64,000 nt of DNA from Octopus bimaculoides (GCF_001194135.2 NC_068990.1:70033820-70097819); one strand, 5' to 3'. Positions 4,690-57,362 are shown, numbered from the stretch's first letter. Notes: a model not told the origin generated them from the letters alone. A program made the numbers and translations.

Positions 4690-6045
4690 ATGCTACATAA
4701 AAAGCATTGGTTTGGACGCTGGTGCCACATAAAAAGCCCTCAGTACATTTTGTAAAGTGGTTGGCATTAGGAAGGGCATCCATTATAGAAACCAAGCCAA
4801 AACAAACTAGGGAACCTGGTGCAAGCCCGATCTTACCAGTTCTTGTCAAACCATCCTACTCATGCCAGCAAGGAAAATGGACGTTAAATGTTGATAAAAG
4901 TTGTTCTTGATTGAATCAACCTCCAGTACATTACTGGTTCCTATTCTATTGATTACCTAGAAATAAAAGGCAAACATCAACATGCTCAGGGTTTGAACTT
5001 TGATGCAACTTAGTTTTAGTTCCAAATTTTTACCATGTTTGTTTGTTTGTTTTGTTGTTTTTTTTTTTACATCTCCCCTTCCTTGTAATAATAACCTCTT
5101 ACATTAGCACAAGGCCAGAAATTCAGCTAGTTGACTGATCCTTTATTTTATCAACTCTTGATGGATCAAAAGGAAAAATTGATCTCAGCAAGATTTGAAC
5201 TTAGAGCCTTAAGGGACTTAGTTAAATACAACAAAATTTTTAGTTCTATACACAACAAATTCATTCATGATGCTTTCTTATCATCATCATCATCATCATC
5301 CTCATCATCATTGTTAATAATGTCCATAGGTCTGATGGAGTTTTATTGAGGCCAATTTTCTTCAGCTGGAAGCCTTTTGCGTATCCAAATGTCATCTGTT
5401 TTCAAGCAAGATGATATGTCCCAATGGCTAGGCATGTTTTTGCAGAAGACTGGAAATGAACGACACTGCTTGTATGACACTGATACTCATTTACAACTAT
5501 CATATGGTGTCGAGCCAAGGAGAAACAAACATACACTCACAGGCACATTCACACACACACACACACACACATGCTCGGACATGCATACAGTTGGATTTTT
5601 TTTCCTTCAGATGCTATTTACTGAAGCCACTCACAAGGCTTCTCGTTGGCCCAAGGCTATTGTAGAAGACATTTTCCCTCGGTGCTGCTCAGTGGGACTG
5701 AACTTGAAACCATGTGGTTGGGAAGCAAACTTTCTAGCCACAATCCCACTGTAACTAAACCAACACCAACCACACGAAAAAAGTAAGAACCAGGAGAAGA
5801 TAACTCTAGTTTTGTATTCCTGATTGTCCTTCTAATTTAAACATTCAGAATTGTTTGTTTTCTTCTGGGAGGTGGGGAGGGGTTTCTTCTCAAATGTCCA
5901 CACTTTGCCTTCCGTCTGTCTTGTTTAATTTAAGATCATGTATCTGGTATCAGACACTCTTTCCTTTTCCATTTCCTCCCCCTCCACCCCCACCTCTCTG
6001 TCTTCATACTCAGCCTGTATATCTGGTACTTACTCTGCATGTGTA

Positions 6046-18107: not shown

Positions 18108-20067
18108 CAGTGTTTTAAAAATATATTTCCATGTTATTATGAGTGGAATATATTTCAGATGCAGGATAAAAAGACATTGTTTTTACAGGTGGATGCTCTT
18201 CCTATGAACTGTTAAACCTTCATCTTTAAAATAAGGTCTAGCTCTTGTTATTTTTTTCACCTGTCAAGTAAACTAGAGCAAATAGAGTTGTGTGCCTTGC
18301 TCAGAGACACAAGACAATAGCCACATCAGTAATATTTGAACATATCATGATATGATCTCTAAACTAACTCGTTAACCTCTCAGTCTGGGTTTAGTTTCAA
18401 ATACTAGTTAAAATGATTCTTCTCTACCACCATCACCACCACCGCTATCATCAGCATCATCATAACTAGTCGANNNNNNNNNNTACCACCATCACCACCA
18501 CCGCTATCATCAGCATCATCATAACTAGTCGATTTTCTACTTTACCATAATAGTAAGGTGCTCCAAGAATTCTTTATTCCCTTCAGATTTCTTTATTCAT
18601 GTTTATTTATTCTGATCCATTTATTTAAGCTAAACAAACAACTTCATGCACATGGCCTTCCCTAGTGACCAGTTATTGTTAGGAAAATAATCATTTCTGG
18701 ATAAATCTTGGCTGGATTGGAAGTTTGAATTTTAAATCAAAGAACAAAAAAGAAAATGAAGAGAAAATATATCTTATCTTTTTTTTTTTTTTTNNNNNNN
18801 NNNNNNNNNNNNNNNNNNNNNNNNNNNNNNNNNNNNNNNNNNNNNNAGCTTGCTTCCCAACCACATGATTCCAGGTTCAGTCCCACTGCATGGCATGTGT
18901 GTGTGTGTGTGTTTCTGTGTTTGTCCCCCACCATCACTTGACAACCGATGTTGGTATATTTACATCCCCATAACTTAACAGTTTGGCAAAAGAGACTGAT
19001 AGAATAAGTACTAGNNNNNNNNNNTTTGGCAAAAGAGACTGATAGAATAAGTACTAGGCTTATAAAGAATAAGTTGGTTTGTTCAACTAAAGGTGGTGCC
19101 TCAGCCTGGCTGCAGTCAAATGACTGAAACAAGTAAAAGAATAAAAGAATAGTGCCATTTCATAACTCTACAATAAATATTCATTAGTCTCCACCAGTTT
19201 GTTTTAACAGAGTTCTTAATGTCCATTCTTATTCCATAGCCTTATTTACTTCTTTGTTAAAAATTAAGCCATTAAACTCTTCATGAACCATGTCTATTCA
19301 TAGAATCAGCACATTATTTTCTCATTTCTTCAAGTTGTACTGATGAAAGAGAATTTTCTCTTTGGTTAGGGCACCACACTAATGTTGGTTTCAAATTTTG
19401 GCACAAGACCAGAGATCTTGAGAGGAGAAAATTTAACTGATTTCTCCACATCAGTACTTGACTGGTTCTTTCTTTTATTAACCCCAGAAGGATGAAAAGC
19501 AAAGTTGACCTCAGCAGTATTTTAACTCTGAACATGAAGAGCTGGAAGAAATGTTAAAATGTTCTAACAATTCGGCTANNNNNNNNNNGAACATGAAGAG
19601 CTGGAAGAAATGTTAAAATGTTCTAACAATTCGGCTAGCTAATAATCCTTTCTATTATTGGTACAAGACCTAAAATTTGTGGCAAATCGACCCCAGGACT
19701 TATTCTTTGGAAGCCTAGTACTTATTCTATNNNNNNNNNNNNNNNNNNNNNNNNNNNNNNNNNNNNNNNNNNNNNNNNNNNNNNNNNNNNNNNNNNNNNN
19801 NNNNNNNNNNNNNNNNNNNNNNNNNNNNNNNNNNNNNNNNNNNNNNNNNNNNNNNNNNNNNNNNNNNNNNNNNNNNNNNNNNNNNNNNNNNNNNNNNNNN
19901 NNNNNNNNNNNNNNNNNNNNNNNNNNNNNNNNNNNNNNNNNNNNNNNNNNNNNNNNNNNNNNNNNNNNNNNNNNNNNNNNNNNNNNNNNNNNNNNNNNNN
20001 NNNNNNNNNNTGTGGTTGTTAAGCAAGCTACTTACCACACAGCCACTCCTACGCCTATGTGTGCAAC

Positions 20068-20158
20068 GCTTACGGCACCTAGGTTTCCCAAGCGGTCACC
20101 CATCTAAGTACTCACCAGGCTCGATGTTGCTTAACTTCGGTGATCGGACGAGAACCGG
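20068..20158 (-). pseudogene. 5'-truncated 5S rRNA copy (about nt 28 to the 3' end)
   Basis: Minus strand CCGGTTCTCGTCCGATCACCGAAGTTAAGCAAC...GTACTTAGATGGGTGACCGCTTGGGAA...GGTGCCGTAAGC matches the animal 5S sequence as I recall it; no oligo-T terminator. Confidence 0.88.
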
Positions 20159-21572
20159 AGGGATGGTTATGGTTGAAATGCCTTTCATTATAGATTTGTT
20201 AGATCAGAGCTGACCTAATTAAAACAAAAACAAGTTTATATTTCAAGCCTATCGTCATATGTGTAATTGTCCTCTATTCACCTTCCATAATATGGCCAGG
20301 CTATTTTTATTATTATTATTAATATTATCATTAAACTAGTGAGCTAACAGAATCATTAGCATGCTGGACGAAATGCTTAGTGGTATTTTGCCCATCACTA
20401 TATTCTGAGTTCAAATTCTGCCTAGGTTGATTTGTCTTTCATCCTTTTGAGAATTGATAAAACAAGTACCAGTTGAGCACTNNNNNNNNNNTGTCTTTCA
20501 TCCTTTTGAGAATTGATAAAACAAGTACCAGTTGAGCACTGGATTTGATGTAATCTTTCCTCCAAAATGTCAGGTCTTGTGCCTATAATAGAAAGGGCTA
20601 TGGTGAGCTGGCAGAATCATTAGCACACCAGATAAAATGCTTAGCGGCATTTTGCCCCATTGCTATATTCTGAGTTCAAATTCCGCCATGGTCAACTTTG
20701 CCTTTCATCCTTTTGGAGTCCATAAATTAAGTTCCAGTGAAGCATTGGGGTCGATATAATTGACTATTCCTCTCCCACAAAATTTCAGGCCATGTGCCTA
20801 TAATAGAAAAAATTATTATTATTCAACTTTACGCTGAAAGTCTGGCCGGTAACGTATTTTTCTGCATTATATGGACAATTTATCCTAATCACGCTATTTA
20901 TAGCATTATCATGCGTTTGAGAAATAAATTTATTTCTNNNNNNNNNNGCTATTTATAGCATTATCATGCGTTTGAGAAATAAATTTATTTCTGTATTATT
21001 ATTATTATTATTTCATCGTAAGGGGGTGAGCTGGACAAAATTCTCTGCAGCATGTTGCCTCCCTTTACATTCTGGGTTCAAATCCTGCCAAGGTCAACAT
21101 TGCCTTGCATCATCTTGGGGTTGATAGAATAAGTACAAGTGAGCTCTGGGCTCATTGTAATCAACTAACCTGTCTCCACTCTAAGCTTTCAGGCTTTGTG
21201 CTTCTTGTAGAAAGAACTATTATTCATTTTTTTAATATTCACTTTTGCATGTTTGCATGGGTTAGATGGAATTTATTAAAGCAGATTATCTATGGCCAGA
21301 TGCTTGAAATGTTGCCAACACAAACACTCACTGACATATATATACAATAGGCTTCTTTCAGTTTCCATCTACCAAATCTACTTACAAGGTTTTGATTGGC
21401 CCCGGGCTATAGTAGACAACGCATTTGCCCAAGGTTCCACATAGTGAGACTGAACCTGAGACCACATGGTTGAGAAACAAACTTCTCAACCACACAGCTA
21501 CACTTGCACCTATTATTATTTTATATTAATCATTTAACCTTTATTCTTTTTCTTTTTTTTACTTTATTCCAG

Positions 21573-21710: not shown

Positions 21711-22435
21711 GTAAGTACTCTTTTCATTTCCATTATTTCATGATATCATATTGACTTATATGGTGCAATATTGATATATAATATATATGCTTACAGTATA
21801 TATTATTTTCATAGCTAACTGGATGTCTGATGTATTTTTACAATAATACATACACGCATAAATATGTATTTATATTCTCTTCCATTTTCCATTATTTAAA
21901 GTCTTTTTCTTAGGAAAAAGTTGGTTTCTAACAAAAATGCAAAGCTCAATCATTGAAATATAAATAGCAAAAACAAATCTACAGTTTGAGCTTGAGAAAA
22001 GTCTTGCACATTTTTACTGTTCTGCTTGCAGATTGTATTTTTAATATATGTATATGCATGCATATAGATAGATAGACACTTAGACGCTTGTATTGAACAG
22101 TGAGAAAGTGTGTTCGACACTGAATTGGTGGGTAACTATACTTTATTTGTGGCTAACAATGCACCCAATAGTACCATCTGGAAGAAATCCCCACAATTGT
22201 TCAACTAAACCACATGGGAATGCTATTACTCATCTCCATTTTCAATGAGAATATATATGCATATAGTTTTCATGAAGCAATGTCTGATATATATAAATGA
22301 TATTAATTTTTTTTTTTAGCCAAAACCATGCAATTATTAATAATATAGGTCAATGATTAGTAGTTTTACATTTCCATGTTTCAAGAAATCTTCAAAGAAA
22401 AGGTGTTGTGAGCTGACTTCAACTTTTCTCCAGAG

Positions 22436-22475
22436 ATTTCCTGAAGAAGGGTTCCTAACCCCAAAATATTGAAAT
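22436..22475 (+). ncRNA. Degenerate minimal hammerhead motif (GAAA changed to AAAA)
   Basis: AUUUC-CUGAAGA-A-GGGUU(CCU)AACCC-C-AAAA-UAUU-GAAAU; stem I AUUUC/GAAAU perfect. Confidence 0.55.
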
Positions 22476-22912
22476 GCCGGGTAATAATACAAACCATTGA
22501 CCTGTATTTTTAATACCTTGCACTGTTTTTGCTTTAAAATAAAATAAAATCATTTGTGTGTGTGTGTGTAGAATACTTTAGATGTGATAATGAATGATAT
22601 AATANNNNNNNNNNGTGTGTGTGTGTGTAGAATACTTTAGATGTGATAATGAATGATATAATACTACAAACAATCTCTTTAATTTAAAAGGAATATATTT
22701 TAGAGTCTTATGTAGGTTATTATCAAAGCTGAGGTTGTCTAATTTATATATACATTTCATCATCTTTTAATGCCCATTTTCTAATGGTTGCTTTGGTTGG
22801 ATATGAGGGAGGATCCAATGAGTCTGAGGACTGCATCATACTCCAGTGTCTACTCAGGCATGATTTCTATGACTGGATACCTTTTCTAATGCCAACCACT
22901 TCACAGAGGGCA

Positions 22913-37487: not shown

Positions 37488-38609
37488 CAGTAATAACAAA
37501 TTCCATCAAATATTTACAGCAAGCTGTCAAAACACTTCATACTTGCTTTTGTCCTGAACAAACCCAAATGCATTTGTTGCTTCCTAAAATCCATATTGAC
37601 CCTTGTCAATCTGCCAGAAATCCTCACTGTGTATGTTTTCTCTAGCCAACTGTTTGCACCTGACTGTACAGAAATAGATATTTCCCTGATCCAGTTGCAC
37701 TTTTTCAACACCCTCGTCATGCCTTCCCACCTTTTGTTTTGTTGTTCTTTTTGTTTTGTTTTGTTTTTTATATATCCCTGCTAACATTCTGGTCTTTTTT
37801 CTCAAATGTACACTTTACTCTTCCAAGTTTCTGTTTGCCAGTCAAAGTTGAACTTCATTGTGAAGTTTTTAAAGGCTTGGATGAACAGAACCTTCACAGA
37901 ACCTGGTCCTAATACCCTCTGTCAAGACCTTTAAAACATCTCATCCATTTCTCTTTCCTGACACACTATTTTTCTGTTTACCGTTTTGTTAGTCAAAAGT
38001 CCTTTTATTTTAATTACTTTTTCCCTTAAACTGCTACTCTTTGTAACTCAATACCATCATCTTGTTTTCTTATGGACTGTGAAATTCAGCCCTTTAGGCT
38101 TTGTATCAATCAACATATTTTGAATTTGTTGGCTCCTTCTTTTCCTTCTTTGTGATCCCTTATATTACAAAGCCTCAAGTGTTGTTTGGGTCAAAATCAT
38201 TTAAAACAAAAAGACAGTACACCTTTTTTATCAATCAAACTTGAATTTCATTGTGATGTCTTTAATGACTTGGGTAAAGAAAAGACAAGAGGACCATAGC
38301 AAACCCCTTTTTATTGATTAAATTTCACTGTATTGAGAACCAGTTGTAGGACTATTTAATTCTTTTATTCATGATATGTGAATTGCTCTAGAATAGTTTA
38401 TCAGCAGCTTACATTCACACCTGGCTTTCTGATTTTCGTGTACAGAATTCCACTAGAAGCCTTCTCTTTGTTGACAAAATCATTTATCAAATGATAAACT
38501 GACAAATACAAAACTTATATGCTGACCTTGTTAGTGCCAGTATCATATAAAAAGCACCCAGTACACATTGTAAGGAAGGGCACGCTGCCATAGAAATCAT
38601 ATCATATAT

Positions 38610-38932
38610 TCTTATTTCATTTGCTTTATCTAGTGTGATGTTGCTACTCTTAACTAATTTTCCTCTTTTCAAGGTTGCTTTGACACATTTTTCTAAGCCA
38701 AATTTCATGTTTATTTCTTTGGTAAATCCATGTATTGTCTGTAGTAATGTTTCCAGCTGTTAATCATTTGTAGTATACAGTTTTAGATCATCCATATATA
38801 AGAGGCGGCTGACTGTTTTGCTGTAACAGTTGTATCCACATCCATTTCTGTTTAGCAAGTCAGATAAAAGTGTCAGTGCCAAGCAGAAAGTGAGTGGAGA
38901 GAGTGTGTCTCCCATGAATATTCCTCTTCTAA

Positions 38933-38933
<1 letters not shown>
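38610..38933 (-). mobile_element. Reverse transcriptase fragment of an R4/Dong-like non-LTR retrotransposon
   Basis: IRRGIFMGDTLSPLTFCLAL...LLYMDDLKLY..*QLETLL...INMKFGLEKCVKATLKRGK in one frame with a single stop. Confidence 0.85.
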
Positions 38934-38967
<34 letters not shown>

Positions 38968-38990
38968 TCTTTTTTTTTTTTTGTTTTCAG

Positions 38991-39181
38991 AGGAAAATCC
39001 CTTTTTATTTTGAAGACACAACTTGAATTTCTGGGGTTGACCAAACTAAAACATATCCGCAATGGCAATGTGGTAATCAAGCATAATGATAACTTGTGCT
39101 ATGCTGAAACCATAAAGTTCAATTCAATATTTACATCTCCCGGACAGAAACCGTATGTCTCTGAAAATGGTAACAACTGCG
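38991..39181 (+). CDS. EGFR: EGFR exon I, end of L2 GKSLFILKTQLEFLGLTKLKHIRNGNV...NLCYAETI
   Basis: Poly-T + TTTTCAG acceptor, GTAGGT donor, 191 nt, phase 2-1. Confidence 0.93.
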
Positions 39182-53319: not shown

Positions 53320-54547
53320 ATATATTTGTTTTTCTGTGTCTTTGTGTATGCATTTGTCCCCCACCACTTCTTGACAGCCATTGTTGGTGGTGCTGTGAGC
53401 TGATTTATGTGTATTTACACCATTTGTCTACAGTGAGAAATATTCTCTGTGATAAAGCATAGTGACTGACTTGTTTATGAGTTCGAATGTGCCACAAGCA
53501 TGTTGGAACTGGTAATAACATTGCACTTATACTCATCACTGCCAAGCGCTCCCACCGATTAGCACCCATCACTGTTAATTTGTTTACGTCACCATAAATT
53601 AGCTGTTCAGCACAACAGAACTGATAGAATAAGTACTGGGCTTTAAAAAAATAAGGAAGTGCAATTGATTCATTCAACTAAAACCCTTCAAGGCTGTGCC
53701 TCGGCATGGCTGCCCATCTAATTATGAAAACAAGTAAAAGATAAGAAATAAAGACAGGGTTGATTCTTTTCTCGATTTCAACAAAACTTATAAGAGGTTA
53801 GCCATCAGATCAACCCTAGTACTTATTTTTACATATGGCCATTATTCTACCAGTTTCATTTTGCCAAACTGCTAAGTTACATAGATGTAACCCGTTTCTG
53901 CCCTCAACCATTTTCTCATACTTTAATCCCTGATCTTGTAGCTTAAAACCACTTCTCTTGAGGTTTGTAGTCTTGCAAGCTGCATGGCAACCTCACTAGT
54001 GCTGGTTACACGAAAAAACAAAGGACACACTATAAAGTGGTTACTATTTGGAAGGTAAGTTCCCATAAAATTGATGGAGTAAGTTTGAAGACTTCTGCAT
54101 TCTAATGGAGATCTCACAAGTACATTGATGTTATTGACAGAAACAAACAACATGAAACTGAGGATCTTACTGAAGTTAATAGAGGAGATTCCTGGTGTAG
54201 CATTTGAAATGCTGTTGCAGACATTTGAAAAAGAATATATCTACTGAGTCATCTTCTAAATCTACAAGAATTATTTCTCAAACAGGATATCAAGGAAAAT
54301 TATAGATTTCCCTTTGTGTGATTCAATTTTATTCAGTTTCTTTACTATAAGGATTTCTGTTAAATGCTTTACTAGAAAAGTTATCCAGATTTAAAATCAT
54401 TTTACCTAAAATTAAAAAAAAAACAACAAGGCAACATTTGTACTATTTCCTATCAAATGTGTTATAGATTTGTTTTCATTGTAGTTTTACCAGAGAAAAT
54501 TTTTTTAAATGCAATTGACAAAATATTTTCTTTTCTATTTAATGTAG

Positions 54548-54663
54548 TTTAACTGCACGGCAGTCTGTCCATTATTTAAGCCATATTCGGTACAAGATGA
54601 AGAGCTGAGAGGTCGTACTGTCTGTGTTGATGACAGCCATCCTGTGATACTTGCAAGAATACA
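54548..54663 (+). CDS. EGFR: EGFR exon N, membrane-proximal ectodomain FNCTAVCPLFKPY...RTVCVDD
   Basis: TGTAG acceptor, GTATGT donor, 116 nt, phase 0-2. Confidence 0.88.
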
Positions 54664-54871
54664 GTATGTAACTTTATTCTATATATGTTCTTAATGTGCT
54701 TGTGTGCATGTGTGTGTAGGTATATATATATATATATATATATTGGAATAGTTAGTATGAAGCATTGTGTGGAATATATTCTATAAAATTCATGGGTAAG
54801 GATGGAACAATGCGAAATAAATCCAAGGTAAATCACAAGAAAACAGGCATATGAATTAATGATGATTTACT

Positions 54872-54921
54872 CTACATTCAATATTTCAGGGTTATGACCC
54901 CCCCCCCTCTTCAGGAATTAG
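54872..54921 (-). ncRNA. Minimal type I hammerhead ribozyme motif with intact core
   Basis: CUAAUUC-CUGAAGA-G10-UCAUAA-CCCU-GAAA-UAUU-GAAUGUAG; palindromic AAUAUU replaces stem III. Confidence 0.7.
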
Positions 54922-55093
54922 GAAATGTTGCAGACGGACATGTTTGAGTATGTGGGGAGTAGACATGCGCAGAAAGTTGTTATAGCAACCAGCTAGCTTC
55001 ATATAACTCTCTTCAAAAGAGAGTTATATATAACTCTCTTTTGTACATATAACTCTCTTCAAAAGAGAGTTATATGTACATCTGCAACATTTG

Positions 55094-55142
55094 CTAATTC
55101 CTGAAGGGGGGGGGGGTCATAACCCTGAAATATTGAATGTAG
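55094..55142 (+). ncRNA. Inverted copy of the 54872 hammerhead with core A9 lost
   Basis: CUAAUUC-CUGAAG-G10-UCAUAACCCU-GAAA-UAUU-GAAUGUAG. Confidence 0.6.
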
Positions 55143-55686
55143 AGATAAATCACCATTAATTCATATGCCTGTTTTCCTGTGATTTACCTTGGATTTATTT
55201 CGCATTGTTCCAGCCTTACCCACGAATCTTCCACCAAACCTTAGTCACAATTTATGTTCCTAACACTAACTGAGTAATAACTAAGTTATTTTACTAAATT
55301 CTTTGTTATATTTAAAGTAATTAAAAGAAACACAGAGCATCTCAAAATAAATGCAGTAACAAAAGGTTTAATGGCCATACTGTCATGGATTGGACAGTTT
55401 GACGGGAACCAGTGGGTCTGAAGACTGTACCAAACTCCAGTGTCTGCTTTGGCATGAAACCATACCCTTCCTGATGCCAACCACTTATTATAGTGTCTAC
55501 CGGGTTATGTTTTTATGGTACTGTGCAACAAGTGACATGAGGTTATCATACAACTTAACAAGACATATTTAGTTCCAGTGAATTGCAATAGGAAGGGCAT
55601 AGAGCCATACTGGCATCTGCCTCAACAAAATCCATTTGGCCTATGCATGCATGGAAAAGTTGGCATTAAACAATGTCAATAATGAT

Positions 55687-56479: not shown

Positions 56480-57362
56480 CAAGGCAGTATCAAAAAGTTC
56501 CTGGACTAGTTATGTTTAATAAAAAAAATAACTTATTTATTTAAGTTTTAATATCATCTCCTTCAAAATAGTCACTTTGTGCAGCAATACGCCGGTCCCA
56601 GTATTCCTGCCACTTTTGGAATCTGTCCTGGAAGTTGTTTTCCATAAGCAAATTGAATCGAAGATATTCTGCAATTTGCTCTAGATCTCAATAAACAACA
56701 GTGACCTTTGAACTGCATTTTTATCGTGGGGAAGAGATGGAAGTCTGCAGGTGTTAAATCTGGTGAATAGGGCAGGTGTTGAAGGGATACCTTGTTGTTT
56801 TTGATGAGAAACTCATGAGTGAGGAAACCTCGCTGATGGGGTGTATTATCATGGTGAAGAATCTAATTCTTTGCGCTCCACAGATCCAGTTGTTTGCACT
56901 GAATATCCTCCCTCAATTGCTTCAAAACATTGTCCTTTGACAAACCTCATGCACAAGCTGATGAATTTTCTCCATATTTCTGGAGGTGATGCTCTTAGCA
57001 GGTCTTCCAGATTGCTCATTATCTGAAGTGCTTGTGCCACTCAAAACATTGCGTACGACCCATTGCCTCATTGCCATAAGCTTGCCTAAGTATGCTCAAT
57101 GTCTCTGTAACAGACTTCCCAAGTTGAAAACAAAATTTCATGTTAGATCTTTGTTCCTGTCCATGATAAAATCACAGACTACAGTGTACATATGATCACA
57201 AAAACACAAATTTCACAACTTGCTCAGTAAACATGGTGATGTCACTCAGCACACTGCCTGCCTCATGAAGGTCACTGCTAGCTCTCACTGTGCACACAAT
57301 TGTGTGCTGCCATCTGTTGGCAAACTACAGAACTAGCCCGGGAACCTTTTTATACCAACTTG
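56480..57362. mobile_element. Internally deleted, degenerate mariner-family element
   Basis: Imperfect TIRs (AGTATCAAAAAGTTCCTGGACTAGTT vs AACTAGCCCGGGAACCTTTTTATACC); mariner-like subterminal CATCTGTTGG. Confidence 0.6.

What the first reader, a model, noticed from the sequence alone, without database searches (positions are those of the whole stretch)
54788..55227. Two hammerheads locked in a 147-bp inverted repeat 125 nt after an exon donor
The arms differ at only 7 positions and each contains a minimal hammerhead with palindromic AAUAUU. The minus copy has an intact CUGAAGA; the plus copy has lost A9. Inverted pLTR arrangements are characteristic of Penelope-like elements. In the EGFR pre-mRNA the arms would form a near-perfect duplex that both sequesters the ribozyme and creates an ADAR/Dicer substrate next to exon N.
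Basis: partly seen in the sequence, partly recalled or inferred. Interest (0 to 1): 0.8.

Follow-up and report, generated by a model that had tools for sequence, protein, structure and literature searches.

The report
Decayed hammerhead retroelement pair in intron
Two broken-off tail ends of a hammerhead-ribozyme-carrying retrotransposon (Penelope-like in build) lie head to head in an EGFR intron. This is an already described kind of insertion scar, so the finding is real but ordinary.

Summary
They start 125 nt after a confirmed EGFR exon (54547-54663) and are present in independent read sets, so this is not an assembly artefact.

The minus-strand arm carries every core nucleotide of a minimal type-I hammerhead, with cleavage predicted after U54880. 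The plus-strand arm, the only one inside the pre-mRNA, lacks A9.

Related copies in this genome and three related species keep the ribozyme block better than its flanks. A larger sister family (relic at 22436-22476) shares the same architecture, with a compensatory change in helix I.

At this locus the "intact" ribozyme is weakened. C11.1 has become U (CpG decay) and the G-run in helix II has grown from 5 to 10.

The anatomy fits a Penelope-like twin insertion: 3' ends outward, both copies 5'-truncated, snap-back filler in the middle, an extra ~43-nt tail on one side, and a microsatellite at the left end. No RT/GIY-YIG gene was found in the window.

The sense RNA would fold into a ~150-bp duplex (-295 kcal/mol). 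One RNA fragment shows four A>G changes that are absent from DNA.

Verdict: a new member of a known kind, of low to moderate interest.

The parts
54547..54663 (+). EGFR/ErbB exon, between the domain IV exon and the transmembrane exon. Its donor GT is at 54664-54665.
   Evidence: A spliced 1020-nt RNA contig covers exactly 54547-54663. Neighbouring exons match GF_recep_IV, Furin-like and PK_Tyr_Ser-Thr, and human EGFR/ErbB2 chains.
54700..54743 (.). (TG)n(TA)n microsatellite abutting the outer (3') end of the left element copy.
   Evidence: Sequence. Read depth is extremely high here.
54745..54787 (-). Tail extension of the left copy. It is homologous to the family tail but lies outside the inverted repeat, because the right copy lacks it.
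   Evidence: Paralogue contigs run on to 54744-54783. Loose-end consensus sequences TATTGTATAAAGGATCGTGGGTAAGG and AATCCTTTATACAATATATTCTACACAATG match this stretch.
54788..54941 (-). Left arm of the inverted repeat. The element copy is in minus orientation, with its 3' end to the left.
54876..54918 (-). Minimal type-I hammerhead, antisense to the gene. Helix I is 54915-54918 paired with 54876-54879. The core CUGAAGA is 54908-54914. The G-run is 54898-54907. GAAA is 54884-54887. AUAU is 54881-54884. U17 is at 54880, and predicted cleavage lies between 54880 and 54879.
   Evidence: Sequence and descriptor hit. The block is invariant in paralogues except for G-run length.
54942..55014 (-). Further upstream part of the left copy. 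It is homologous to the family and ends at a 5' truncation point at 55014.
   Evidence: Paralogue contigs cover 54877-55014. Loose ends diverge after 55014 (16 contigs in X10).
55015..55073 (.). Junction filler made of inverted and direct duplications of the left copy's terminal ~15-30 nt (two hairpin units CATATAACTCTCTTCAAAAGAGAGTTATAT).
   Evidence: the repeat finder D1, I4 and I5. These are the miRNA-like hairpin hits below threshold in Rfam. Depth here is single-copy or zero in paralogues.
55074..55227 (+). Right arm of the inverted repeat. The element copy is in plus orientation, is 5'-truncated at 55074, and stops where another repeat begins.
   Evidence: The junction 55046-55188 is also present in a related species (X14).
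55097..55138 (+). Dead hammerhead relic in the sense (pre-mRNA) strand. It reads CUGAAG then a G-run, so A9 is deleted. U is at position 11.1.
   Evidence: Sequence and alignment column 170.
55119..55186 (+). Four A>G differences (55119, 55121, 55132, 55186) in one RNA fragment that spans the locus-specific junctions.
   Evidence: X16 contig 55089-55239. No such variants appear in DNA runs X1, X4, X5 or X21.
55225..55371 (.). Very-high-copy interspersed repeat, cut at its left end, that bounds the right arm.
   Evidence: Depth is 10^4-10^5 times single copy in four species. Loose ends lie before 55225 and behind 55371.
22436..22476 (+). Hammerhead relic of a larger sister family. It has the same architecture, but G12 is lost through CpG decay.

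Best explanation
The feature is the fossil of one integration event of a hammerhead-bearing retroelement. The element was Penelope-like, or a non-autonomous derivative that uses Penelope-like machinery.

How it formed. Both cleaved target strands primed reverse transcription from the 3' region of the element RNA. This gave two 5'-truncated copies with their 3' ends outward: the left copy about 54745-55014 on the minus strand, and the right copy 55074-55227 on the plus strand. The copies were joined in the middle by snap-back duplications (55015-55073).

Role of the ribozyme. The hammerhead is part of the element's terminal repeat. In the element's own life cycle it would cut multimeric element transcripts as a dimer, through the AUAU palindrome that replaces helix III.

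State at this locus. Both ribozymes are decaying.
- The sense copy, the only one in the EGFR pre-mRNA, has lost A9 and is dead.
- The antisense copy keeps the whole core, but it has C11.1 changed to U and a G-run grown from 5 to 10. No RNA read covers it.

Effect on the host. The pre-mRNA can fold the arms into a ~150-bp duplex that is at least occasionally A-to-I edited. The neighbouring exon is still spliced normally, so the insertion is most likely neutral.

Shown: the repeat, the motif, family conservation, the truncation points, the predicted duplex, and normal splicing.
Inferred: twin priming, Penelope-like identity, past cleavage activity, and editing.
For: Repeat and motif:
- The inverted repeat and hammerhead motif are in the sequence.
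- Independent read support comes from three samples. The locus-specific junction is also in a related species.

Conservation of the ribozyme:
- Between 54875 and 54921, paralogues in four runs differ only in G-run length, C>T at 54898/54899 inside the G-run, and two minor sites (54881, 54890). The flanks carry many majority variants.
- Unitigs of 43-46 nt covering exactly the ribozyme sit at 3-5 times single-copy depth with 0 substitutions.
- The sister family has ~100-160 contigs per run, and its depth peaks exactly on the ribozyme block.
- Its majority consensus is AUUUC-CUGAAGA-A-GGGGU-CCUA-ACCCC-GAAA-UAUU^GAAAU. This has the extra base after A9, the G10.1-C11.1 pair and the palindrome listed for Penelope-like hammerheads (PMC4209133).
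- Helix I shows a compensatory change between the two families: A-U here versus U-A there at 2.4/1.4.

Retroelement anatomy:
- Copy number rises towards the outer ends, as expected for 5' truncation.
- The left copy runs on to 55014 in register with paralogues, and then the filler starts.
- The arm ends lie 93 nt and ~135 nt after the cleavage site. In the anole element PAc, the RT start sites lie ~85-92 nt after the hammerhead cut, and a 30-40 bp tail lies between two RT start sites. In vitro, both DNA strands are cut and extended (PMC11167929).
- Inverted 5'-truncated adjacent copies, one-sided tails and a microsatellite insertion bias are described for these elements (PMC8557442).

Host RNA:
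- The hairpin has dG -295 kcal/mol and z -34.6.
- Four A>G changes occur in one RNA fragment and not in DNA.
Against: - No RT or GIY-YIG ORF lies in the window. The only RT fragment (38490-39098) looks non-LTR. Penelope-like identity therefore rests on ribozyme type and insertion anatomy only.
- No Rfam hammerhead model matches, even at E <= 10.
- The right arm ends at the start of another repeat, so its end may be secondary rather than an RT start site.
- Nearest-neighbour folding does not favour the double-hammerhead fold: -7 to -10 versus -29 kcal/mol for the dimer MFE.
- Many diverged paralogues have broken cores, so constraint is not universal.
- The editing evidence is one fragment at depth 2.
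Confidence: 0.65

Rival explanations
1. The element is a hammerhead-bearing non-autonomous retroposon (retrozyme-like or SINE-like) that is not itself a fragment of a Penelope-like element. The pair arose in the same twin-primed way, using some other reverse transcriptase.
For: - No RT/EN gene was found.
- No ORF follows the ribozyme.
- An abundant derivative joins 54843/54858 directly to 54976/54981 and lacks the ribozyme (joints). The outer ~60 nt are hundreds of times more abundant than the ribozyme part.
- A 2026 preprint argues that animal retrozymes derive from Penelope-like terminal repeats.
Against: - There is no tandem direct repeat of a 170-400 nt unit here.
- No circular or abundant RNA comes from the locus.
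- The minimal ribozyme without helix III, and the inverted truncated pair, are the Penelope-like signature.
Confidence: 0.2
2. A single truncated copy inserted first. The inverted repeat arose later at the DNA level, by fold-back or template-switch replication (palindrome formation), not during reverse transcription.
For: - The centre consists of short hairpin units and inverted duplications.
- Related species show different centre joints: 54934->55010 and 54976->55071 on opposite strands. This suggests an unstable palindrome.
- The arms share the unusual G-run expansion.
Against: - Both arms point their element 3' ends outward and are truncated at different 5' points. This is the pattern reported for Penelope-like insertions and matches two-strand priming in vitro.
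- The sister-family copy at 22403-22476 also has an inverted piece at its 5' end, so the feature recurs with this element type.
Confidence: 0.1
3. The unit is a foldback or MITE-type DNA transposon whose terminal inverted repeats contain a hammerhead-like string by chance.
For: Long, nearly perfect inverted arms surround a short centre.
Against: - No target-site duplication flanks 54788/55227 or 54745/55227.
- Paralogues do not share the unit as a whole. They continue past 54941 to 55014 and past 54788 to ~54745 on one arm only, and their copy number forms a gradient.
- The ribozyme block is the best-kept part in two families and shows a compensatory change.
Confidence: 0.03
4. The repeat is an assembly artefact (a collapsed or mis-joined repeat).
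For: The window is a gapped short-read scaffold with 43 N-runs. Penelope-like insertions are known to trouble such assemblies.
Against: - Zero-difference unitigs for both arms and the centre come from samples dated 2015, 2022 and 2025.
- Raw reads cover the centre (X21).
- An RNA fragment crosses 54959-55239.
- The junction is present in a related species.
Confidence: 0.02

Closest known systems
Minimal hammerhead ribozymes (min-HHR) in the pseudo-LTRs of metazoan Penelope-like elements (Cervera & de la Pena 2014, PMC4209133; Lunse, Weinberg & Breaker 2016, cited in PMC6765202)
   Same: - Type-I topology with a short helix I (4-5 bp).
- No helix III; a palindromic AUAU replaces it, implying action as a dimer.
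- An extra base between A9 and G10.1, and the G10.1-C11.1 pair, in the family consensus.
- Many dispersed truncated copies, and pairs on opposite strands 100-700 bp apart.
   Different: - At this locus 11.1 is U and the G-run is doubled.
- Helix II is 5 bp rather than the 6-8 bp typical of the Schistosoma families.
- No linked RT-EN ORF was found, and cleavage is untested.
Penelope/Poseidon element PAc of Anolis carolinensis (Frangieh et al. 2024, PMC11167929)
   Same: - The insertion ends lie roughly 90 nt and 90 + 30-40 nt downstream of the hammerhead cut.
- Both target strands are cut and extended in vitro, which explains head-to-head pairs.
- The target is AT-rich.
   Different: - In PAc the ORF starts inside the ribozyme. 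Here no ORF follows it.
- The host is a distant animal.
- The right end here coincides with another repeat, so its origin is ambiguous.
Complex tandem/inverted insertions of Penelope-like elements (Craig et al. 2021, PMC8557442)
   Same: An inverted 5'-truncated copy lies next to another copy, truncation is heavy, the tail is on one side only, and a microsatellite sits at the insertion site.
   Different: Here both copies are short (about 150-270 nt). There is no full-length unit, pLTR-ORF-pLTR, in between.
Metazoan non-LTR retrozymes (Cervera & de la Pena 2020, PMC7229834; Li et al. 2026 preprint)
   Same: A small non-coding repeat with a type-I hammerhead, probably mobilised in trans and related to Penelope-like terminal repeats.
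   Different: Retrozymes are tandem direct repeats expressed as circular RNA and are reported to avoid introns. This one is an inverted pair inside an intron, and almost no RNA from it was detected.
Intronic inverted-repeat retroelements as ADAR substrates (for example inverted Alu pairs; from general knowledge, not tested here)
   Same: A long intramolecular duplex in a pre-mRNA, with clustered A>G changes.
   Different: The evidence here is a single RNA fragment. No small-RNA data were available.

Membership tests
Hammerhead ribozyme, type I, minimal (Penelope-like type) | Catalytic core C3 U4 G5 A6 N7 G8 A9 ... G12 A13 A14 | tested here: met
   Met for the minus-strand copy (CUGAAGA 54908-54914, GAA 54885-54887). 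NOT met for the plus-strand copy, which lacks A9.
Hammerhead ribozyme, type I, minimal (Penelope-like type) | A15.1-U16.1 followed by a non-G residue at 17 (the cleavage site) | tested here: met
   A54884, U54881, U54880, then G54879.
Hammerhead ribozyme, type I, minimal (Penelope-like type) | Helix I formed by the sequence 5' of the core and the sequence 3' of the cleavage site (4-5 bp) | tested here: met
   AAUUC/GAAU gives 4 bp. The sister family has AUUUC/GAAAU with 5 bp, a compensatory A-U to U-A change at one pair.
Hammerhead ribozyme, type I, minimal (Penelope-like type) | Helix II closed by the G10.1-C11.1 pair | tested here: not met
   This locus has G.U (CCCU before GAAA) in both arms. 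Relatives have CCCCGAAA (loose ends; G at 22463 in 37-47% of depth). The U is therefore a CpG decay of a canonical pair.
Hammerhead ribozyme, type I, minimal (Penelope-like type) | One extra nucleotide between A9 and G10.1 | tested here: inconclusive
   The family forms fit: G + GGGGU/ACCCU in paralogues with a 5-G run, and A + GGGGU/ACCCC in the sister family. This locus has 10 G, which gives a 6-nt bulge or a slipped helix.
Hammerhead ribozyme, type I, minimal (Penelope-like type) | Helix III absent or 1-2 bp, with a palindromic 15.2-16.2 that allows a dimer | tested here: met
   AUAU (within AAUAUU) is present in both arms and in the sister family.
Hammerhead ribozyme, type I, minimal (Penelope-like type) | Match to a curated covariance model | tested here: not met
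   No Rfam hammerhead family matches at gathering score or at E <= 10. From general knowledge, the Rfam models expect a helix III, so a miss is expected for this subtype.
Hammerhead ribozyme, type I, minimal (Penelope-like type) | Site-specific self-cleavage | not testable with these tools
   Folding does not favour the double-hammerhead fold. No RNA ends at 54880 could be examined, because coverage there is zero.
Penelope-like element | Single ORF with a telomerase-like RT and a GIY-YIG endonuclease | tested here: not met
   None in the window. The only RT fragment (38763-39098) is a weak RVT_1 hit of non-LTR appearance. Linkage elsewhere in the genome could not be tested.
Penelope-like element | Hammerhead located in the terminal repeat (pLTR) | tested here: inconclusive
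   The ribozyme sits 93-135 nt from the element's 3' end, as in PAc. However, no full unit is available to define a pLTR.
Penelope-like element | Heavy 5' truncation with an adjacent inverted 5'-truncated copy | tested here: met
   The truncation points are 55014 and 55074, with the 3' ends outward. The copy-number gradient rises towards the 3' end.
Penelope-like element | A 30-40 bp tail present at one end only | tested here: inconclusive
   The left copy has ~43 extra family-homologous nt (54745-54787) that the right copy lacks. But the right end abuts another repeat, which may have removed the tail.
Penelope-like element | AT-rich or microsatellite target | tested here: met
   The left end abuts (TG)n(TA)n at 54700-54743. 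This is consistent with the feature but does not prove it.
Metazoan non-LTR retrozyme | Tandem direct repeats of a ~170-400 nt unit, each with a hammerhead | tested here: not met
   The only direct repeat is the 38-nt hairpin unit in the centre.
Metazoan non-LTR retrozyme | Abundant small circular RNA | tested here: inconclusive
   Coverage of the locus is almost nil in eleven RNA runs. Circularity could not be assessed.
Foldback / MITE DNA transposon | Target-site duplication flanking terminal inverted repeats, with the whole unit repeated | tested here: not met
   There is no duplication at either candidate boundary. Paralogues share one-sided extensions, not the unit as a whole.
ADAR-edited intronic dsRNA | A long duplex in the transcribed strand, plus clustered A>G in RNA that is absent from DNA | tested here: inconclusive
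   The duplex is predicted. Four A>G changes occur in one locus-specific RNA fragment at depth 2 and in none of four DNA runs. No further fragments were found.

The most novel reading that the evidence does not exclude
The hairpin, which is shared by at least two related species, may have been co-opted. As an ADAR-edited (and perhaps Dicer-cut) duplex 125 nt from the donor, it could tune splicing or nuclear retention of the EGFR transcript. In that reading, loss of A9 in the sense-strand ribozyme only, while the antisense core stayed whole, would reflect selection against a self-cutting pre-mRNA.
Probability: 0.06. Interest if true: 0.55.

Novelty: new member of a known kind. Interest (0 to 1): 0.25.

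Why it matters
It adds an example, from a lineage where I found no published description, of minimal dimer-type hammerheads and of the head-to-head truncated insertions typical of Penelope-like elements.

Read-depth profiles alone show that the ribozyme block is the most conserved part of two repeat families in this genome.

For the host gene it matters little. The only ribozyme in the pre-mRNA is dead, and the exon is spliced normally.

The long intronic duplex is a plausible editing substrate, but that is an ordinary property of inverted retroelement pairs.

Tried and rejected
- Rfam at gathering score and at E <= 10 gave no hammerhead. The only hits were sub-threshold miRNA-like matches to the central hairpin units and a microsatellite. 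I read these as generic hairpin matches, far below their gathering scores.
- Monomer folds do not give the hammerhead. The double-hammerhead energy lies well above the dimer MFE for the locus and for both family forms. This is uninformative about activity, because tertiary contacts and protein help are not modelled.
- The search for the autonomous partner in the window found only a non-LTR-like RT fragment and a mariner relic.
- Long-read runs (PACBIO, NANOPORE) were not listed.
- Four more RNA runs gave no locus-specific reads, only paralogue transcripts. Three deep raw RNA runs gave zero coverage of 54874-54941 and 55044-55213 (most of both arms) at 6% sampling.
- The near-perfect PDB hit 9p9u turned out to be a tandem human EGFR kinase scoring twice, not a same-species structure.
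- The Lunse et al. paper is not held in the library.
- I looked for a target-site duplication and for the missing part of the high-copy repeat on the other side of the insertion. Neither was found.
- I ran no further search on naming the host, because the verdict does not depend on it.

Full report

Yes. The window holds two arms, 54788-54941 and 55074-55227, that are reverse complements of each other. In a 155-column alignment they differ by 7 substitutions and 2 one-base indels. The blastn self-match has E = 1e-113.

The arms start 125 nt after the donor of an exon. A spliced 1020-nt RNA contig fixes that exon's limits at 54547-54663. The gene is an EGFR/ErbB orthologue on the + strand. Neighbouring exons match the Pfam families GF_recep_IV, Furin-like and PK_Tyr_Ser-Thr, and human EGFR/ErbB2 chains at about 65% identity.

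The repeat is not an assembly artefact.
- Unitigs from samples dated 2015, 2022 and 2025 tile both arms with zero differences.
- One 259-nt contig runs from the left ribozyme through the centre to the right ribozyme (54878-55136).
- Raw reads of a 2026 run cover the centre.
- An RNA fragment covers 54959-55239.

**2. The hammerhead motifs**

The minus strand of the left arm reads AAUUC / CUGAAGA / G10 UCAUAA CCCU / GAAA / UAUU ^ GAAU. All core nucleotides are present. A15.1 and U16.1 sit in the palindrome AUAU that replaces helix III.

The plus strand of the right arm has CUGAAG followed directly by the G-run, so A9 is deleted.

I built a descriptor from the published definition: core boxes, at least 3 bp in helices I and II, and a palindromic helix III substitute. 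It hits only this minus-strand site in the 64 kb window, against 0.02 expected in shuffles that keep base composition.

Rfam gives no hammerhead match even at E <= 10. From general knowledge its models expect a helix III, so the miss does not weigh heavily, but it is a failed test and I report it as such.

**3. Family evidence**

Laying contigs of public DNA runs on the region shows that this element belongs to a small repeat family. The family is present in this species and in three related species labels.
- Between 54875 and 54921, paralogues differ from this locus only in the length of the G-run (most have 5 G, not 10), C>T at 54898/54899 inside that run, and two minor variants (54881, 54890).
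- The flanks carry many majority variants: 54846-54848, 54851, 54862, 54866, 54871, 54874, 54923 and 54935-54937.
- Unitigs of 43-46 nt that cover exactly the ribozyme sit at 3-5 times single-copy depth with no substitutions.
- More diverged paralogues do have broken cores (loose ends).

A second copy in the window, at 22436-22476(+), belongs to a larger sister family.
- 100-160 contigs per run match it, and the depth peaks exactly on the ribozyme block 22438-22473.
- Its majority consensus is AUUUC / CUGAAGA / A / GGGGU CCUA ACCCC / GAAA / UAUU ^ GAAAU.
- That consensus has a 5-bp helix I, a one-base bulge after A9, a 5-bp helix II closed by G10.1-C11.1, a tetraloop and the AUAU palindrome.
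- These are the traits that Cervera and de la Pena list as arguing against chance for Penelope-like hammerheads (PMC4209133).

With 5 G, the family of our locus folds the same way (G / GGGGU CAUA ACCCU).

Between the two families, one helix I pair is A-U in one and U-A in the other. This is a compensatory change.

The C11.1-G12 step is a CpG.
- In the sister family it is CG, TG or CA in large fractions (22462 C>T in 21-31% of depth, G at 22463 in 37-47%).
- Relatives of our family read CCCCGAAAUAUUGAAUAC.
- The U at 11.1 in both arms of our locus is therefore a decayed C.

**4. Anatomy of the insertion**

The arms are not whole terminal repeats.
- Paralogue contigs stay homologous to the left copy beyond the arm on both sides. 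Inward they run to 55014, where 16 contigs diverge at once. Outward they run to about 54745, next to the (TG)n(TA)n tract at 54700-54743.
- The right copy starts at 55074 and stops at 55227. That is within two bases of the start of a very-high-copy repeat (55225-55371), which is itself cut at that end.
- The 59 nt between the copies (55015-55073) are inverted and direct duplications of the last 15-30 nt of the left copy.
- Copy number rises steeply from the inner to the outer parts of the arm, as expected for elements that are truncated at the 5' end.

The structure is therefore two 5'-truncated copies, head to head, with their 3' ends outward. The ends lie 93 nt (right) and about 135 nt (left) downstream of the cleavage site.

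This layout matches what is described for Penelope-like elements.
- They often show an inverted 5'-truncated copy next to another copy, a 30-40 bp tail at one end only, and a preference for microsatellites or AT-rich sites (PMC8557442).
- In vitro, the anole element cuts and extends both target strands. It starts reverse transcription at two internal sites roughly 85-92 nt after the hammerhead cut and 30-40 nt further on (PMC11167929).
- Pairs of minimal hammerheads on opposite strands 100-700 bp apart were already noted in Schistosoma (PMC4209133).

What is missing is the protein. No RT/GIY-YIG ORF is in the window, and I could not search the rest of the genome.

**5. What it does at this locus**

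The EGFR pre-mRNA contains only the A9-less ribozyme, so the transcript is not at risk of self-cleavage and the duplex has nothing to sequester.

The antisense ribozyme keeps its core but is weakened by U11.1 and by five extra G next to A9. Nearest-neighbour folding puts the double-hammerhead fold at -7 to -10 kcal/mol, against -29 for the best dimer fold. The G-run prefers to pair with the UUCC of helix I and the core.

No locus-specific RNA covers the antisense ribozyme itself in the eleven runs examined. The only locus-specific RNA is one read pair over 54959-55239; the few other reads are paralogue transcripts.

The sense RNA is predicted to fold the arms into a ~150-bp duplex (dG -295 kcal/mol, z -34.6).

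One RNA fragment crosses locus-specific junctions (55089-55239). It carries A>G at 55119, 55121, 55132 and 55186, plus one further unlisted difference. None of these appears in four DNA runs. This is the signature of A-to-I editing on the sense strand, but it is one fragment at depth 2.

No small-RNA data were available.

The locus-specific junction 55046-55188 is also present in a related species, so the insertion is old. The 6% divergence between the arms fits that age.

**6. Comparison, novelty and verdict**

The feature works like, and most probably is, a decayed twin insertion of a Penelope-like or Penelope-dependent element carrying minimal dimer-type hammerheads.

Membership in the hammerhead class is supported for the family. 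At this locus one defining pair (G10.1-C11.1) is not met and cleavage is untested.

Membership in Penelope-like elements is inferred from ribozyme type and insertion anatomy, not from the RT.

The rivals are:
- a non-autonomous hammerhead retroposon unrelated to a Penelope-like fragment (0.2);
- later DNA-level palindrome formation (0.1);
- a foldback DNA transposon (0.03);
- an assembly artefact (0.02).

All parts of the arrangement have been described before. I found no paper on such ribozymes in this lineage, so it is a new member of a known kind.

Interest is 0.25. The most novel reading not excluded is a co-opted, edited hairpin that tunes EGFR splicing, with orientation-specific loss of the sense ribozyme under selection (probability about 0.06).

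Noticed in passing
window 22403-22515: This is a second hammerhead-bearing repeat copy from a larger sister family (~100-160 contigs per DNA run), whose depth peaks exactly on the 36-nt ribozyme block. The copy has lost G12 through CpG decay. Just upstream (22403-22421) it carries an inverted piece of the family's own upstream sequence, that is, another 5' snap-back.
   Followed up: partly
window 55225-55371: This is a very-high-copy interspersed repeat, at 10^4-10^5 times single-copy depth in four species labels, and it is also abundant in RNA. It is cut at its left end exactly where the right arm stops. Its first ~45 nt show about 50% identity to the tail of the hammerhead element (blocks CACAAT and CTAAC), which might mean a shared tail.
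   Followed up: partly
window 54806-54873 and 54976-55014: These two pieces of the element are hundreds of times more abundant than the ribozyme part. Some contigs join them directly (54843/54858 to 54976/54981), skipping the ribozyme. This points to an abundant ribozyme-less derivative family.
   Followed up: no
window 20067-20180 (-): A full-length 5S rRNA match (58 bits, E 1e-9) with several broken pairs lies inside an EGFR intron. It may be a pseudogene or the head of a 5S-derived SINE.
   Followed up: no
window 38490-39098 (-): A reverse-transcriptase fragment with a YMDD motif gives a weak RVT_1 match. It looks non-LTR (LINE-like) rather than Penelope-like.
   Followed up: partly
window 56575-57171 (-): This is a mariner/Mos1-type transposase relic. 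It has an HTH_48 domain and a PYSPDLTPADFHLFP motif, and is broken by stop codons.
   Followed up: partly
window 54997-55082: The central hairpin units score 26-37 bits against several miRNA precursor models, all far below their gathering scores. These are generic perfect-hairpin matches, not evidence of a miRNA.
   Followed up: yes
window 55015-55059: One run of the same species (X10, library type unknown) has zero contig depth over the central hairpin units, although it covers both arms. This is either a polymorphic centre or poor recovery of a palindrome.
   Followed up: no
window, whole: The scaffold has 43 N-runs (10-774 nt) and is rich in (TA)n/(TG)n tracts. A moderately repeated element recurs many times (for example 400-600, 1300-1600, 2450-2600, 5600-5750 and 55400-55480).
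   Followed up: no
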